From sequence record NC_010821.1: DNA of 64,000 bases; one strand, given 5' to 3'. Each line of letters opens with the position of its first letter. Positions within the stretch are counted from its first letter, which is position 1. The position numbers were made by a program, and so were the translations under genes. The notes beneath the pieces are model-generated. The model saw only the letters and a list, made by a program, of their open reading frames with translations. It was not told the origin of the DNA and did not search any database. Of the stretch, positions 3,069 through 55,601 are shown piece after piece.

Positions 3069-3437
3069 ATGCTAAGTTTAACACACGTAACACGACTGAT
3101 GCTATTAACTGGAGCTTTGATGTTCCCTACAATGGCACACAGCGTTCAACAGGTTTTCGTTGATCAGCTTTATTGTGATGGTCTAGCTGATATGGCTAAG
3201 GCTGGAGCAGAAGCTAAGCAACGAGGTGAGTCACTTCAACAGTGGCGAAACAACATGTTGGCCATGAAAGGCTACGGCGTGCGCAACGAAGATAACGTTC
3301 TTTTCCGCGTTCTGCCACAAGCAATTGAAGAAGCTGGTGAAGTCTATAAGGCAAAGCGTCCTCCGGTTGCCACCTACATCGCTACTTATAAAGCTTGCAT
3401 GGTATCAGACTTCGGTCATACCAAAATACTGCGATAA
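3069..3437 (+). CDS. putative exported/periplasmic protein with signal peptide
   Basis: N-terminal R-hydrophobic-AHS signal-like sequence; two Cys in the mature part. Confidence 0.65.
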   Translation: MLSLTHVTRLMLLTGALMFPTMAHSVQQVFVDQLYCDGLADMAKAGAEAKQRGESLQQWRNNMLAMKGYGVRNEDNVLFRVLPQAIEEAGEVYKAKRPPVATYIATYKACMVSDFGHTKILR

Positions 3438-9109: not shown

Positions 9110-10516
9110 ATGTCGGCAGTTAAATATAGTGCAGTAGTTGAAAACACCCGTAAACTGGTGCGTGTAGTAAAGGTAGATGCAATTACCCCAATCAAGAAAG
9201 CTGACTTTATCGAGCTGGCCAAAATCGATGGTTGGCAATGTGTAGTAAAGAAAGACGAGTTCAAAGCAGGTGATCTGGCAGTGTATGCTGAGATCGATTC
9301 CCTGTTACCACTCGACAATCCACTGTTCGCCTTCCTTGGTGAGCGTTCGGATGGTAAGCGGACATTTGATGGCGTAGCGTACTCTCGTATCCGCACCGCT
9401 AAGATGCGTGGTGAAGTATCACAAGGTTTGTTGCTACCACTACCAGAACAATTCAAGGGTAAGAAGGTCGGTACTAACCTGACCAACGAACTCGGTGTTC
9501 GTAAACTGGAAGCTGAGATCGCTAACGTTGATGGCTTTGATGGTCGTCTTAACAAGGATGGTCCGATTAGTCTGTGGGAACGTCTGGCGCGTTTTGTAGC
9601 AGGTCCACCTGCCGAAGCAATGCATCTTCCTTTCCCTGCTCAGATCTCTAAATCAGATCAAGAGCGTGTTCAGAATATCGGTAACCAATATGCCGAAGCA
9701 GCGGCGTCCGGCGAGACGTTCGAGGAAACGGTTAAGGTCGATGGTCAATCCATGACAGTTTATAGCTTCCGCGATATGGATGAGGCTGGTCCTATTCGCC
9801 GCTACGGCGTTTGTTCGCGTAACTTCGACATGCGTATGACTGATGTTGTATTCACCCCTGTACAGGCTTTCCGTCGCTTTGTAGCACAGAACATGCTTGC
9901 CTTAAGTGGTGGGTTCAGTGGTTTGTTCCGTACGGCTCAATTCCTGACTAAACAGGTTATGGATAAAAAGCTGGATGCCGACTACGCCATTAAAGAGTAC
10001 TTCACTAAGCGGTACTTCTGGTTCTCTCCATTTAAAATGTGCATCGCCGCAATGGATGATAACTGCGTCAATTATGTTATCACCAACAAAGTACTGGATA
10101 AACTGGCAGCTTACAACGTACTGCACGATGACTGCATTACTGTACAGGGTGAGTTGTTCGGTCCAGGTATCCAGAAGAACTATGAACGTCCTGCTGAGAA
10201 ACGTTTCGCAGTGTATCAGGTGTATCGTAATGGTAGCGAATGGGTTAAACCGATCGAAGCTCGCGCTATTACCGAAAGCATCGGCTTGGAATACGTTAAA
10301 GTACTGAATGGTTCCACTACGCTACCTAAGTCGGTTAAGGAAGTTCTGACCCGTGCTAAAGGTAAGGGTGCCTATGCAGCTTTTGACCCATCGATCAATG
10401 CCGTACCTGACATCAACCGTGAAGGTATTGTATTTAAATCAAACACTCGTGATTTCAGCTTTAAGGTAATCTCGACTGAATATCTTCTTGAAGCCGAAGC
10501 AGCTATGGAAGAATAA
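9110..10516 (+). CDS. ATP-dependent RNA ligase, Rnl2/DRB0094-like, with N-terminal OB-like domain
   Basis: N-terminal LAKIDGWQCVVKK...AEIDSLLP; nucleotidyltransferase motifs KVDG (I), QGELFG (III), FAVYQV (IIIa), EGIVFK (IV), FKVIS (V). Confidence 0.88.
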   Translation: MSAVKYSAVVENTRKLVRVVKVDAITPIKKADFIELAKIDGWQCVVKKDEFKAGDLAVYAEIDSLLPLDNPLFAFLGERSDGKRTFDGVAYSRIRTAKMRGEVSQGLLLPLPEQFKGKKVGTNLTNELGVRKLEAEIANVDGFDGRLNKDGPISLWERLARFVAGPPAEAMHLPFPAQISKSDQERVQNIGNQYAEAAASGETFEETVKVDGQSMTVYSFRDMDEAGPIRRYGVCSRNFDMRMTDVVFTPVQAFRRFVAQNMLALSGGFSGLFRTAQFLTKQVMDKKLDADYAIKEYFTKRYFWFSPFKMCIAAMDDNCVNYVITNKVLDKLAAYNVLHDDCITVQGELFGPGIQKNYERPAEKRFAVYQVYRNGSEWVKPIEARAITESIGLEYVKVLNGSTTLPKSVKEVLTRAKGKGAYAAFDPSINAVPDINREGIVFKSNTRDFSFKVISTEYLLEAEAAMEE

Positions 10517-52262: not shown

Positions 52263-52349
52263 TGGTGCCGGTGGTGGGCCTCGATCCCACAATCCCTTAC
52301 GGGCGGCGGATTTTAAGTCCGCTATCTATACCAATTCGATCACACCGGC
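52263..52349 (-). tRNA. trnL: tRNA-Leu (anticodon UAA), class II, encoded CCA
   Basis: GCCGGTG/CACCGGC acceptor, D loop with GG, GCGGA-CTTAAAA-TCCGC anticodon arm, long variable arm CCCGTAAGGG, T arm GTGGG-ATCGAGG-CCCAC (non-canonical ATCG in place of TTCG), ACCA end. Confidence 0.93.
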
Positions 52350-52469
52350 GGGTAGCACTGACGAATCAGTGCGACGGACTATACTGGTCCGTTGCAGCTC
52401 AGTTACCATGAGTAGGCTATCACGGAGTGTAATTACTCATATAGTATTACACTCCTGGTATTCTTTTAC

Positions 52470-53138
52470 TTAGGGGGTTACCAGCTCGCCCCATTTAGGA
52501 TCAAAGGCAATCAACTCGTCACGACTGAGTTCACGCATCCGCCAAGCTTGGATGGAATCAAACTTGATTGTGTTATCGTGACAGGAGTACATGTATCCTT
52601 GAATTCGGTGACCGTCGGTAGTATAGCCAGTGGTTTCAATTGGGCACACGAATACGTTACCGCGTGCACCTTGCTTGAACGTGTAGTCCTTTAGTCCGTA
52701 AACACGTACATTGATTCCTTCACTGACCGTACTTGAGCGACCAGTGGGCCATATGGCATTTTCATAGTAATCAACTTGAGCAATGGTAGCGGGCAGCAGT
52801 TTACGGAGTTCATATTCAAACTCTATCTTCAGCTTGATGTTATTCAGTGCATCGAATACGACTTGATCAAATACATAGAAGCCTTCATGGGTGTGTCCTT
52901 CGCCTCTATGTACGATGAAACCGTGTTCGCGTTCACCTACGTGAATCGGGTATTGCTCCGTAGATTCCTTAATAGCCCAATCACTGACGTATTCTATTGA
53001 TTCTACGACTGTTAGAGTCTTACCAGATTGGTGAGTGACCGTGATTGGACCGTGTTGGTCGATGTACGTGCGGATGATGTTGTCATTCATTTTTAATTGC
53101 CTTTGATATTGGACATCGTCTTGGTGACGTGCCTTCAA
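52470..53138 (-). CDS. hypothetical protein
   Basis: ORF track; TATATTAA promoter-like motif at 53143-53150 (- strand). Confidence 0.75.
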   Translation of the reverse strand: MKARHQDDVQYQRQLKMNDNIIRTYIDQHGPITVTHQSGKTLTVVESIEYVSDWAIKESTEQYPIHVGEREHGFIVHRGEGHTHEGFYVFDQVVFDALNNIKLKIEFEYELRKLLPATIAQVDYYENAIWPTGRSSTVSEGINVRVYGLKDYTFKQGARGNVFVCPIETTGYTTDGHRIQGYMYSCHDNTIKFDSIQAWRMRELSRDELIAFDPKWGELVTP

Positions 53139-54444: not shown

Positions 54445-54633
54445 AAATACCACACGGTCCCACTAGGCAGCTTCAGTATGCGATGGAAGGACTTCAAGTG
54501 TTATGCTACAACGCTCTCTCCGGCAACTACGGGTCTTTTCCCTCAATCCGTGAGGCCCAGGGTCTTCTCACGCTTACGAGGCGCTGGCACTATCGTAATT
54601 TGCATGAGCGTTGTATTCCCGTGCACAGGAATT
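54445..54633 (-). ncRNA. candidate structured RNA (or structured 3' UTR)
   Basis: 10-bp perfect helix TACAACGCTC/GAGCGTTGTA continued by GCAAATTACG/CGTAGTTGC; no credible gene. Confidence 0.4.
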
Positions 54634-54744
54634 CTAGCGTTGCTTGGCTATCAAAGCCAGTTGTCTAGCAAGTAATACATCACGTAAGCGATCACGTTTC
54701 TCACATTCTTTTACAGGTGTGTCTTTGGTATCGTTCACAGTCAT
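54634..54744 (-). CDS. small peptide (36 aa) co-transcribed with the tRNA-like RNA
   Basis: GAAGGT SD; MTVNDTKDTPVKECEKRDRLRDVLLARQLALIAKQR. Confidence 0.5.
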   Translation of the reverse strand: MTVNDTKDTPVKECEKRDRLRDVLLARQLALIAKQR

Positions 54745-54765
54745 TACCTTCAGTTCATATATAAT

Positions 54766-54857
54766 TGGAGTACCCGACATGATTCGAACATGTAACCTCC
54801 TGAGATCGGCACGTAGCTTATGATCTTGGGACTCTATCCAATTGAGATTACGGGCAC
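54766..54857 (-). tRNA. tRNA-like RNA / pseudo-tRNA with aberrant anticodon arm
   Basis: 7-bp acceptor GTGCCCG/CGGGTAC, perfect T arm ACATG-TTCGAAT-CATGT, D loop AATTGGATA with CTC/GAG stem, encoded CCA; anticodon region expanded and mismatched. Confidence 0.8.
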
Positions 54858-54887
54858 CTCTACATATAGTACTAAAGCTAGTATTGT

Positions 54888-55601
54888 TTAACCGCTAACG
54901 TATTCTAAAACTGGGCGCCAGCCCCTGATACGATCGCTGTTCGCTACACCACTAAATGGATATATTCCACGAACGTTACTGTTGCCATTACCTCGGGCAA
55001 TTTGCAATCCAGTTGACGTAGTTTCTTGAATGATGGCGCTTACACCGTCAGATGTAGTTGGGGCTAACCCGAGGTCGCCGATACTGTAGCTGGCGAGGGC
55101 AGGTCCCTCTAAAGCTGCGGCTCCAACCACGGTGGACATTAAACCATACATCAGTTTGTTCCATTCTGTGCCATTCCCATATGGGATGCCATCGTCAACG
55201 TTTGCGCTTCCAGGATATGGGTTAACGTTACATGCATTTATTAATCGCACTCGATATACCTTACCTAAAATCGTGATAAGTTTATTTTGTGCTGCTGTGA
55301 CAATACCTAAGTTATTCATTGTTGCCCATGGTAGGTTAGCACGGGCTGCGCGTTTAGGCATATATTGGACATTCCCGTTATACGCCATTTTAAGCCATCC
55401 CTCGGTAGGATATGGGTTAGTACCAGTTGTGATACCCACCGCTGTAGCCAAGGCCGCGTAGGTGATAAACTCACTTGAACTTACCTCACCGAAGAATCCA
55501 ATAGTCGAGTTCCCTGTTTTAAGTGATTGAGGGCCTGGTAATCCTTCTGGCCAATTACCGCCGCTCGAGGAGCCGCCAGTAGTCATTAGTAAGTCGATCA
55601 T
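54888..55601 (-). CDS. putative virion protein, single copy of the GFFGEV...GWRPVLE domain
   Basis: ORF 54888..55640; start 55601 matches the MIDL start of 59305 and lies downstream of TATGTA (55621-55626). Confidence 0.7.
   Translation of the reverse strand: MIDLLMTTGGSSSGGNWPEGLPGPQSLKTGNSTIGFFGEVSSSEFITYAALATAVGITTGTNPYPTEGWLKMAYNGNVQYMPKRAARANLPWATMNNLGIVTAAQNKLITILGKVYRVRLINACNVNPYPGSANVDDGIPYGNGTEWNKLMYGLMSTVVGAAALEGPALASYSIGDLGLAPTTSDGVSAIIQETTSTGLQIARGNGNSNVRGIYPFSGVANSDRIRGWRPVLEYVSG

What the first reader, a model, noticed from the sequence alone, without database searches (positions are those of the whole stretch)
54766..54866. tRNA-like RNA with intact elbow and CCA, a G3.U70 pair and a 22-nt anticodon loop
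Seen (- strand): GTGCCCG-TA-ATCTC-AATTGGATA-GAGT-CCCAA-[GATCATAAGCTACGTGCCGATC]-TCAGG-AGGTT-ACATG-TTCGAAT-CATGT-CGGGTAC-T-CCA. The acceptor stem, T arm, D-loop GG and CCA are intact. The anticodon stem has two mismatches and the loop is 22 nt (closable by GATC/GATC), containing both AT-CAT-AA and GT-GCC-GA anticodon-like heptamers. Acceptor pair 3:70 is G.U. A late-type TATGTA lies a few nt upstream (54861-66). Known: G3.U70 is the major AlaRS identity element and is also used by tmRNA, although the Ala discriminator is normally A73 and here it is U. Inference: preservation of the RNase P/synthetase-facing half with loss of decoding suggests a non-decoding tRNA mimic (decoy for anticodon nucleases or tRNA-sensing defences, or a mini tmRNA-like species) rather than a randomly decaying pseudogene.
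Basis: partly seen in the sequence, partly recalled or inferred. Interest (0 to 1): 0.75.

Follow-up and report, generated by a model that had tools for sequence, protein, structure and literature searches.

The report
Conserved non-decoding tRNA-Arg-derived phage RNA
Jumbo phage 201phi2-1 carries an unannotated small RNA gene that descends from an arginine tRNA, keeps the tRNA body but has a long hairpin where the anticodon should be, and is conserved with compensatory changes in two distant relatives, so it is probably a working tRNA look-alike of unknown role rather than a dead gene.

Summary
ARAGORN and Rfam do not call it.

- **Real gene, not decay.** Two diverged homologues exist, in phage Viktualia and in a 211-kb metagenome contig. 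Seven of 23 pairs show compensatory double changes in the acceptor stem, the T stem and the 4-bp helix that closes the "22-nt loop".
- **Shared architecture.** All three have a 9-level "anticodon" helix with a conserved A.C mismatch. The apical loop is not conserved (8 or 14 nt).
- **Shared promoter.** All three have the same phiKZ-type promoter geometry: an AAnnATAC box at -25..-17 and TATG at the start site.
- **Origin.** The body derives from a phage tRNA-Arg(ACG) lineage that already has U73. G3.U70 is specific to 201phi2-1 (A3:U70 in the others), so the AlaRS and tmRNA ideas fail.
- **Not decoding.** No shared anticodon exists.
- **Function untested.** My best reading is a tRNA-processed, non-decoding body mimic acting in trans.
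- **Closest known.** T4 stable RNA C (role unknown) and engineered "tRNA scaffolds".

A second unannotated structured RNA ("Y", 54507-54632) follows it in all three genomes. No expression data could be reached.

The parts
54880..54888 (-). Upstream promoter box AACAATACT, at -25..-17 from the inferred start site
   Evidence: The same box at the same distance precedes the Viktualia copy (AAGATTACC) and the L049 copy (AATAATACC). It resembles the phiKZ middle-promoter motif AAanTTACc (PMC4666361). A similar box plus ACTATATG lies upstream of the 201phi2-1 tRNA-Leu, which PMC11512511 assigns to a middle promoter.
54863..54866 (-). TATG start motif; inferred transcription start at G 54863, giving a 6-nt leader (54858-54863)
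   Evidence: Sequence. In phiKZ the last G of TATG is +1 for the non-virion RNA polymerase (PMC4666361). TATG is conserved 5-6 nt upstream of all three copies. The start site is inferred, not measured.
54766..54857 (-). tRNA-like RNA 'X', 92 nt including the encoded CCA
   Evidence: model R1: 100 bits here, 112.5 and 111.4 bits in the homologues.
54851..54857 (-). Acceptor stem, 5' strand. It pairs with 54770-54776. Position -1 (54858) can also pair with U73.
   Evidence: Two pairs are doubly compensated and two change on one side. In natural strain variants 54858 is A instead of G, giving A:U with U73 as in both homologues.
54831..54848 (-). D arm: 3 bp plus one extra or bulged nucleotide, and loop AATTGGATA with G18 G19 A20
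   Evidence: Identical in all three copies. The same D-arm 16-mer occurs in unrelated phage tRNA-Arg genes. Because it never varies, covariation cannot test it. An alternative pairing with AGGTT is within 1.5 kcal/mol.
54799..54830 (-). Elongated 'anticodon' arm: a 9-level helix (CC, tandem C.A/A.C, AGATC/GATCT) with a 14-nt apical loop
   Evidence: Pairs 32:55 and 36:51 are doubly compensated. The A.C mismatch at level 4 is present in all three. The loop is 8 nt in the homologues.
54777..54793 (-). T arm with canonical TTCGAAT loop
   Evidence: Three of five pairs are doubly compensated. A strain variant changes 54793 from A to G, which keeps pair 49:65 as G.U.
54766..54776 (-). Acceptor 3' strand, discriminator U73, encoded CCA
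   Evidence: U73 plus CCA is also found in phage tRNA-Arg(ACG) genes L066 and L067.
54507..54632 (-). Linked second structured RNA 'Y' (about 125 nt), downstream on the same strand in all three genomes
   Evidence: 92.9% identical to Viktualia. RNAalifold predicts 40 pairs, 6 doubly compensated. Model R2 scores 142-152 bits in the three genomes only. No Rfam hit. A 124-nt piece is 100% identical in a plant metatranscriptome contig.
54634..54780 (-). Annotated ORF gp451 (48 aa), whose first 5 codons lie inside X; a doubtful gene call
   Evidence: Annotation. tblastn finds no homologue in 50,697 phage records. No Pfam hit. The spacer is replaced by tRNA-Ser in Viktualia and by unrelated sequence in L049.

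Best explanation
X is a functional, non-decoding small RNA gene that descends from a phage tRNA-Arg(ACG) gene.

Shown:
- The acceptor stem, T arm and a 9-level helix replacing the anticodon stem-loop are kept by compensatory substitutions in three diverged jumbo phages.
- All copies share the same promoter geometry.
- No copy has a usable anticodon loop, and they share no anticodon.

Inferred mechanism:
- The phage non-virion RNA polymerase starts at the G of TATG, 5-6 nt upstream.
- The intact acceptor/T-arm/elbow and encoded CCA let host tRNA-maturation enzymes (RNase P at the 5' end, endo/exonucleolytic trimming at the 3' end) produce a stable RNA of about 86-92 nt.
- The arm is about four base-pair levels too long and its loop is irregular, which keeps the RNA out of ribosomal decoding.
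- The invariant parts are the D arm (with the ArgRS-type A20), the variable loop and the lower stem, while the apical loop drifts. I therefore think it acts in trans through its tRNA body, as a ligand or competitor for a protein that reads the tRNA(Arg)-like core, elbow or CCA end. That protein could be a host tRNA-directed defence or modification enzyme, or a phage factor.
- It is probably co-transcribed with the downstream structured RNA Y.

The stated confidence of 0.5 is for the whole statement. It splits into about 0.8 that X is a conserved non-decoding tRNA-derived RNA gene, and about 0.35 that it works specifically as a trans-acting body mimic.
For: - **Homologues and covariation.** Homologues lie in Viktualia (L002 4221-4306) and metagenome contig L049 (2742-2827). 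95.7% of cells are paired, and 7 of 23 pairs have changes on both sides. No shuffle out of 500 reached this, and slid controls gave 0-1.
- **Flanks are not alignable.** X is 87% identical and Y about 90%, whereas the flanking sequence does not align. The neighbouring virion protein is 34% identical.
- **Strain variants keep pairing**.
- **tRNA-Arg origin.** BLAST hits to the 3' half are almost all annotated tRNA-Arg. The best canonical hit of model R1 is a tRNA-Arg(ACG) with U73 and variable loop AGGTT, at 57.9 bits. The acceptor stem of the L049 copy differs from that of the PR1 tRNA-Arg at only one pair.
- **No decoding.** ARAGORN finds nothing in default, intron or tmRNA modes. At a relaxed threshold it calls Phe(gaa) in one homologue, Ile(gat) in the other and nothing in 201phi2-1. 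Known decoding tRNAs have 5-6 bp anticodon stems (PMC7609411).
- **Promoter.**; PMC4666361; PMC11512511.
- **Context.** In Viktualia and L049, X sits in a tRNA cluster (Tyr, Asn, X, with Ser following in Viktualia). In 201phi2-1 it stands alone next to Y, without those tRNAs.
Against: - There is no direct evidence of transcription, processing, stability or charging. The 201phi2-1 ONT-cappable-seq supplement and reads could not be reached. The only RNA-library contig covers Y, not X.
- Only three independent sequences exist.
- The D arm and lower stem never vary, so the cloverleaf there rests on descent from tRNA-Arg. An alternative pairing of AAUCUC with GAGGUU is within 1.5 kcal/mol.
- Folding z-scores are unremarkable.
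- The D stem has an extra nucleotide, and the L049 copy has A53:U61 instead of G53:C61.
- No partner protein is identified, and no protein gene is conserved next to X.
- The family is rare. It is absent from the Psa21 and RVTF4 loci examined and from all other records searched.
Confidence: 0.5

Rival explanations
1. Natural 'tRNA scaffold'. The tRNA body only provides processing and nuclease resistance. The functional module is the displayed hairpin (GAUC/GAUG helix, A.C internal loop, apical loop), which binds a specific protein or RNA.
For: The architecture matches the engineered tRNA scaffold: acceptor, D and T arms are kept and the anticodon stem-loop is replaced by a hairpin insert. Such RNAs are processed and stable in E. 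coli (PMC3753655). The extension helix is kept by two compensatory changes, and the A.C mismatch is conserved.
Against: The apical loop is not conserved (8 nt versus 14 nt, different sequence). The strongest sequence constraint lies in the D arm, variable loop and lower stem rather than at the tip. No conserved neighbouring protein gene exists.
Confidence: 0.2
2. Cis-acting processing element. X serves as an RNase P / 3'-processing site at the head of a small non-coding operon (X, tRNA-Ser, Y, small ORFs), defining ends or stability of the downstream RNAs rather than acting itself.
For: X always directly follows the promoter, and Y always lies downstream on the same strand. In Viktualia the spacing is tight: X, 6 nt, tRNA-Ser, about 1 nt, Y.
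Against: In 201phi2-1 and L049, Y starts 133 and 93 nt after the CCA, so processing of X would not set Y's 5' end. In Viktualia tRNA-Ser already provides such a site. A mere processing signal would not need an invariant D arm or a conserved elongated arm.
Confidence: 0.12
3. It still decodes, either after removal of a mini-intron or as an unusual tRNA (for example the relaxed ARAGORN fold with a 7-nt loop and a long variable region).
For: At -ps90 ARAGORN draws a 7-nt loop with U33 in Viktualia (GAA) and L049 (GAU). The 201phi2-1 loop contains CUACG, which matches the start of a tRNA-Arg(ACG) anticodon loop.
Against: - The proposed anticodons differ between near-identical bodies (Phe versus Ile), and 201phi2-1 has no such fold.
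- That fold ignores the two compensated pairs of the extension helix.
- ARAGORN's intron mode finds nothing.
- I saw no bulge-helix-bulge motif, and the inserts (9 to 15 nt) are far too short for a group I intron.
- Known decoding tRNAs have 5-6 bp anticodon stems (PMC7609411).
Confidence: 0.05
4. A decaying tRNA-Arg pseudogene that is merely young.
For: It is not called by tRNA finders. There are mismatches in the anticodon stem and a G.G in the Viktualia acceptor stem.
Against: Seven pairs are doubly compensated, the promoter geometry is conserved, and 24 nt are identical across phages with 34% protein identity in the neighbouring gene. X is retained in 201phi2-1, where the neighbouring canonical tRNAs are absent.
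Confidence: 0.05
5. An alanine-accepting mini-tmRNA-like or AlaRS-directed species.
For: G3.U70 in the 201phi2-1 copy.
Against: Both homologues have A3:U70. U73 is a tRNA-Arg lineage trait. ARAGORN -m finds no tmRNA. I saw no tag reading frame or pseudoknots in the 92 nt.
Confidence: 0.03

Closest known systems
Phage T4 small stable RNAs, RNA C (species 1) and RNA D (species 2)
   Same: They are encoded inside a phage tRNA cluster, and in T4 they lie in tandem right after tRNA-Arg. RNA C has a canonical T arm (GGTTCGAATCC), an acceptor-like helix and a long hairpin where an anticodon arm would be. Model R1 hits its 3' part at 19.3 bits, similar to its scores on genuine T4 tRNAs. They are non-decoding, and their roles are still unknown (PMC3014915, PMC9697503).
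   Different: There is no sequence homology beyond the T arm and acceptor. RNA C is 139 nt with a large extra 5' domain and has no encoded CCA in the annotation. X is a compact cloverleaf clearly derived from tRNA-Arg. Y is not related to RNA C or D by model R2.
Canonical phage tRNA-Arg(ACG) with U73 (e.g. Providencia phage PR1; IMG/VR contig L067)
   Same: The acceptor stem is nearly identical to the L049 copy. They share U73-CCA, variable loop AGGTT (L067), the T arm, and a D loop with G18 G19 A20.
   Different: X replaces the 5-bp stem and CUACGAA loop with a 9-level mismatched helix and an 8-14-nt loop. It has one extra nucleotide in the D stem region, and tRNA finders do not recognise it.
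Engineered 'tRNA scaffold' RNAs (Ponchon and Dardel)
   Same: The design is identical: acceptor, D and T arms are kept and the anticodon stem-loop is replaced by a hairpin insert. Such RNAs are processed and protected by the cell's tRNA machinery (PMC3753655).
   Different: The scaffold is a laboratory construct. X is natural and conserved, and its 'insert' is only a short helix with a drifting loop.
tmRNA tRNA-like domain
   Same: It has an acceptor stem plus T arm plus CCA, with the anticodon arm replaced by a long helix. The 201phi2-1 copy has G3.U70.
   Different: I saw no mRNA-like domain or pseudoknots. G3.U70 is not conserved, a full D arm is present, and ARAGORN -m is negative.
Eukaryotic mascRNA-type tRNA-like small RNAs (from my own knowledge, not tested here)
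   Same: They are non-decoding cloverleaf RNAs released by tRNA-processing enzymes and carrying CCA.
   Different: They belong to a different domain of life, are cut from the 3' end of a long ncRNA, and share no homology with X.

Membership tests
Canonical decoding tRNA (Rfam RF00005) | 7-bp acceptor stem, discriminator, CCA | tested here: met
   The stem is kept by compensatory changes.
Canonical decoding tRNA (Rfam RF00005) | T arm with a 5-bp stem and T-psi-C loop; D loop with G18 G19 | tested here: met
   TTCGAAT and GG are invariant, and the T stem covaries at 3 of 5 pairs.
Canonical decoding tRNA (Rfam RF00005) | 5-bp (at most 6-bp) anticodon stem and a 7-nt loop with U33 and an anticodon shared by orthologues | tested here: not met
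   The helix has 9 levels with mismatches, and the loops are 8 or 14 nt. Relaxed ARAGORN gives conflicting anticodons or none. See also PMC7609411.
Canonical decoding tRNA (Rfam RF00005) | Recognised by tRNA covariance model or ARAGORN | tested here: not met
   No RF00005 hit even at E<=10 in a 461-nt search. ARAGORN default finds nothing.
tRNA-Arg lineage (by descent) | Closest canonical relatives are tRNA-Arg; D loop with A20 | tested here: met
tRNA-Arg lineage (by descent) | C35 and the Arg anticodon in a normal loop; arginylation | tested here: not met
   No conserved anticodon loop exists. Charging itself is not testable with these tools.
tmRNA | G3.U70 conserved | tested here: not met
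   Both homologues have A3:U70.
tmRNA | mRNA-like tag ORF and pseudoknots | tested here: not met
   ARAGORN -m finds none. I saw no tag reading frame or pseudoknots in the 86-92 nt.
Intron-containing tRNA | Bulge-helix-bulge motif or group I intron in the anticodon loop, giving the same mature anticodon in orthologues | tested here: not met
   ARAGORN -i finds none. The helix is continuous without the two 3-nt bulges, and the insert lengths differ with no common anticodon.
tRNA pseudogene | Uncompensated decay across arms; no conserved expression signals | tested here: not met
   Promoter geometry is conserved.
T4 RNA C / RNA D-type stable RNAs of phage tRNA clusters | Location in a tRNA cluster; tRNA-like T arm and acceptor; non-decoding | tested here: met
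T4 RNA C / RNA D-type stable RNAs of phage tRNA clusters | Sequence homology to T4 rnaC or rnaD | tested here: not met
   The R1 match to rnaC is limited to the acceptor and T arm. R2 (Y) has no hit in the T4 region.
T4 RNA C / RNA D-type stable RNAs of phage tRNA clusters | Accumulates as a stable processed RNA during infection | not testable with these tools
   No usable RNA run was available, and the supplement of PMC11512511 is not held.

The most novel reading that the evidence does not exclude
X, possibly together with the linked RNA Y, is a dedicated counter-defence or host-takeover RNA of nucleus-forming jumbo phages. It would be a tRNA(Arg)-body decoy that is matured like a tRNA but cannot decode. 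It would titrate a host factor that recognises the tRNA core, elbow or CCA end (for example a tRNA-directed immune nuclease or acceptor-end-modifying toxin), or alternatively carry an amino acid for a non-ribosomal reaction. This would explain why 201phi2-1 has X although it lacks the neighbouring canonical tRNAs found in its relatives.
Probability: 0.15. Interest if true: 0.8.

Novelty: new variant of a known kind. Interest (0 to 1): 0.5.

Why it matters
Phage tRNA clusters have been known for decades to contain small stable RNAs that are not tRNAs, such as T4 RNA C and D. Their roles are still unknown. X is a cleaner example. Its origin is readable (tRNA-Arg), and exactly one arm has been remodelled. 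It has its own promoter, and it sits in a phage that otherwise carries a single tRNA. That makes the question "what does a phage do with a tRNA that cannot decode?" testable in a tractable chimallivirus, at a time when tRNA-directed defences and phage tRNA countermeasures are under active study. It also corrects the annotation: there are two unannotated RNA genes, and one doubtful ORF overlaps one of them.

Tried and rejected
- **Exact and gapped pattern scans.** I scanned IMG/VR five times and the metagenome and genome collections once each. These yielded one new true X homologue (L049) and one informative canonical tRNA-Arg (L067).
- **Chance matches.** L034, L064 and L065 are chance matches in coding sequence, and so is every metagenome locus (L037-L063) except L049.
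- **Synteny.** I looked for X in the syntenic or tRNA regions of the closer relatives Psa21 and RVTF4, with model R1 and filters off. Only canonical tRNAs were found.
- **Conserved partner protein.** I looked for a conserved neighbouring protein gene and found none.
- **Expression data.** The supplement of the 201phi2-1 transcriptome paper is not held, and the 2008 genome paper is not held. The run searches returned no run of infected cells. The one RNA-library contig covers Y only.
- **Intron, tmRNA and relaxed-tRNA readings.** All were rejected using ARAGORN.
- **Y versus T4 RNA C/D.** Homology was tested with model R2 and rejected.
- **CUACG in the 201phi2-1 loop.** This could be a remnant of the Arg anticodon loop. 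The same 5-mer occurs at a different, non-homologous place in Viktualia, so I treat it as unresolved.

Full report
**Identity of the window and of the element**

The window is part of Pseudomonas phage 201phi2-1, a nucleus-forming jumbo phage. Record position equals window position plus 248000.

It has:
- a 7-bp acceptor stem with G3.U70, followed by TA;
- a D arm whose loop contains GG;
- CCCAA/TCAGG with two mismatches;
- 22 nt that can be closed by GATC/GATC;
- AGGTT, then a T arm with loop TTCGAAT;
- U73 and an encoded CCA.

The record annotates nothing here except the 48-aa ORF gp451, whose start lies inside the T arm. ARAGORN reports only tRNA-Leu(taa) at 52263-52349. Rfam gives no hit at gathering threshold, nor at E<=10 in a 5-kb or a 461-nt search. 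The folding energy of the single sequence is not unusual (z about -1). The observation therefore stands, but the evidence that it is a gene has to come from comparison.

**Homologues**

I found two diverged copies.
- One is in Pseudomonas phage Viktualia (L002 4221-4306, - strand).
- The other is on a 211-kb metagenome contig (L049 2742-2827).

No other phage record or IMG/VR contig has it. It is also absent from the syntenic or tRNA regions of Psa21 and RVTF4, even with the family model and filters off.

The three phages are far apart. The virion protein next to X is 34% identical between 201phi2-1 and Viktualia, and the DNA between X and the next conserved block does not align.

X itself has 87% mean column identity, including a run of 24 invariant bases across the D arm. 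On my cloverleaf with an elongated arm:
- 95.7% of cells pair;
- 7 of 23 pairs change on both sides while staying paired (2 in the acceptor stem, 3 in the T stem, 2 in the upper part of the long arm);
- no shuffle out of 500 reached this, and sliding the partners gave 0-1 such pairs.

Contigs from four metagenome or metatranscriptome runs add near-identical strains of 201phi2-1. The only change inside X is A to G at 54793, which turns pair 49:65 into G.U. A second change, just upstream at 54858, turns position -1 from G to A. This makes it complementary to U73, as it is in both homologues.

This is not random decay.

**Anatomy shared by the family**

All copies share the following:
- the same D arm, with one extra nucleotide relative to canonical relatives;
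- a continuous 9-level helix in place of the 5-bp anticodon stem, with an A.C mismatch at level 4 in all three and C.A at level 3 in two;
- an apical loop that is not conserved (14 nt in 201phi2-1; UGAAAGAU and UGAUAGAU in the others);
- variable loop AGGTT, T loop TTCGAAT, U73 and CCA.

There is a caveat. The D arm and the lowest two pairs of the long arm never vary, so covariation cannot test them. RNAalifold prefers an alternative in which AAUCUC pairs with GAGGUU, and the two folds lie within 1.5 kcal/mol of each other. The cloverleaf in that region rests on descent from a tRNA.

**Origin**

- The 16-nt D-arm motif occurs identically in unrelated phage tRNA-Arg genes.
- BLAST hits to the 3' half are almost all annotated tRNA-Arg, with 94.6% identity over 37 nt to the Providencia phage PR1 tRNA-Arg.
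- The PR1 gene has anticodon ACG, U73-CCA, and an acceptor stem that differs from the L049 copy of X at a single pair.
- The best canonical hit of the X model (57.9 bits) is a tRNA-Arg(ACG) with U73, AGGTT and the same T arm.

So U73 and the wobble pairs of the acceptor stem are inherited from this tRNA-Arg lineage. G3.U70 is a change specific to 201phi2-1 in what is A3:U70 elsewhere. The AlaRS and tmRNA reading therefore fails, and ARAGORN's tmRNA mode finds nothing.

**Why it does not decode**

- ARAGORN finds nothing in default or intron mode.
- At a relaxed threshold it draws a different fold, with anticodon GAA in Viktualia, GAU in L049 and nothing in 201phi2-1.
- Two nearly identical bodies with different "anticodons", and a third with none, are not a decoding family. 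That fold also ignores the compensated pairs of the extension.
- There is no bulge-helix-bulge motif, and the inserts are far too short for a group I intron.
- Known decoding tRNAs have 5-6 bp anticodon stems (PMC7609411).

**Expression signals**

TATG lies 5-6 nt upstream of all three copies. In phiKZ this motif is required by the non-virion RNA polymerase, and its G is +1 (PMC4666361).

A box of the form AA-n-n-(A/T)-T-A-C-(C/T) sits at -25..-17 in all three. It resembles the phiKZ middle-promoter motif AAanTTACc (PMC4666361).

The same architecture precedes the 201phi2-1 tRNA-Leu, which Poppeliers et al. assign to a middle promoter (PMC11512511). That paper reports 11 small RNAs, but its tables are not held, and no run of infected cells was available. 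Transcription and processing of X are therefore inferred, not shown.

**Context**

- In L049 the order is tRNA-Tyr, tRNA-Asn, X.
- In Viktualia it is Tyr, Asn, an inserted ORF on the other strand, X, 6 nt, tRNA-Ser.
- In 201phi2-1, X stands alone directly after gp452.

In all three genomes a second conserved block, Y (window 54507-54632), follows on the same strand.
- It is 92.9% identical between 201phi2-1 and Viktualia.
- It folds into a 5' hairpin plus a long closing helix, with five fully compensated pairs among three sequences.
- It has no Rfam match.
- Its model finds it only in these three genomes among the seven sources I searched with it.
- A 124-nt piece is 100% identical in a plant metatranscriptome contig, which then diverges.

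X and Y probably form one small non-coding transcription unit. No protein gene is conserved beside them.

**Mechanism**

Shown: a conserved, structurally constrained, tRNA-Arg-derived RNA gene without a usable anticodon.

Inferred: transcription from TATG, maturation by the host tRNA machinery through the intact acceptor/T-arm/elbow/CCA, and exclusion from decoding by the long arm.

The invariant parts are the D arm (with A20), the variable loop and the lower stem, whereas the tip drifts. I therefore favour action in trans through the tRNA body, as a ligand or competitor for a tRNA-recognising protein.

The rival readings are:
- a natural "tRNA scaffold" that displays a functional hairpin (PMC3753655);
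- a cis-acting processing element for the X-Y unit;
- residual decoding;
- a pseudogene;
- the AlaRS/tmRNA idea.

The last three are disfavoured by the tests above.

**Comparison with known systems**

The nearest known natural case is T4, where tRNA-Arg is followed in tandem by stable RNAs D and C. The 3' part of RNA C has a canonical T arm, an acceptor-like helix and a long hairpin, and it scores 19.3 bits with the X model. The roles of these RNAs remain unknown (PMC3014915, PMC9697503). X is not homologous to them beyond the tRNA-like module, and Y is unrelated to them.

I file X as a new variant of the known kind "non-decoding tRNA-like RNAs of phage tRNA clusters". It is not a member of the tRNA, tmRNA or intron-tRNA families.

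**Verdict**

- Interest is moderate (0.5). This is a well-supported new small-RNA family, and a linked second one, in a model jumbo phage. Function and expression remain to be shown.

Noticed in passing
window 54507-54632 (- strand); L002 4002-4125 (-); L049 2921-3043 (+): An unannotated structured RNA of about 125 nt ('Y') lies downstream of X in all three genomes. It has a 5' hairpin and a 9-bp closing helix with 5 fully compensated pairs, and 40 predicted pairs in all. It has no Rfam match. A 124-nt piece is 100% identical in a plant metatranscriptome contig that carries a different 5' hairpin. In Viktualia the region is annotated as a 38-aa CDS.
   Followed up: partly
window 54634-54780 (- strand), annotated gp451: The first five codons of this 48-aa ORF lie inside the T arm and acceptor of X. 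It has no homologue in 50,697 phage records and no Pfam hit. It is probably a spurious call. If the ORF is real, its likelier start is the in-frame GTG at 54738, which follows a GAAGG.
   Followed up: partly
window about 54457-54501 (- strand); L049 about 3090-3140: A further conserved non-coding block (ACACTTGAAG...CCATCGCAT.CTGAAGCTGC) is shared by 201phi2-1 and L049 just after Y. In L049 it ends at the GTG start of a Laminin_G_3-domain ORF. It may be a conserved 5' UTR.
   Followed up: no
L002 (Viktualia record, features list): The tRNA locus tags run 0001, 0002, 0004, 0005. The missing 0003 would fall exactly where X lies, which suggests the annotation pipeline predicted something there that did not reach the record.
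   Followed up: no
L049 2587-2674; L035 (Psa21) 10212-10299: The tRNA-Asn(GTT) genes are 88 nt long with a paired long variable arm, a class-II-like shape that is unusual for Asn. The Viktualia tRNA-Asn is a normal 76 nt.
   Followed up: partly
window 52350-52470 (- strand): tRNA-Leu(taa) has the same promoter architecture as X (AAGAATACC box plus ACTATATG) but an 89-nt leader. This fits the '5'UTR-derived sRNA upstream of a tRNA' mentioned in PMC11512511.
   Followed up: partly
L035 (Psa21) 9843-9920: ARAGORN calls an unannotated tRNA-Gly(acc) with an A.A mismatch in the acceptor stem, between the annotated tRNA-Pro and tRNA-Asn.
   Followed up: no
L068 (phage T4) 2907-3001: The 3' 95 nt of T4 RNA C score as tRNA-like with the X model: an acceptor-like helix CGGAACG/CGUUUCG, a canonical T arm, and a 10-bp hairpin in the anticodon position.
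   Followed up: partly
L067 (IMG/VR contig, 165 kb) 1398-1773: This viral contig carries a tmRNA gene (tag ANDNSPMVEDFRIAA) among many tRNAs, including three tRNA-Arg isoacceptors.
   Followed up: no
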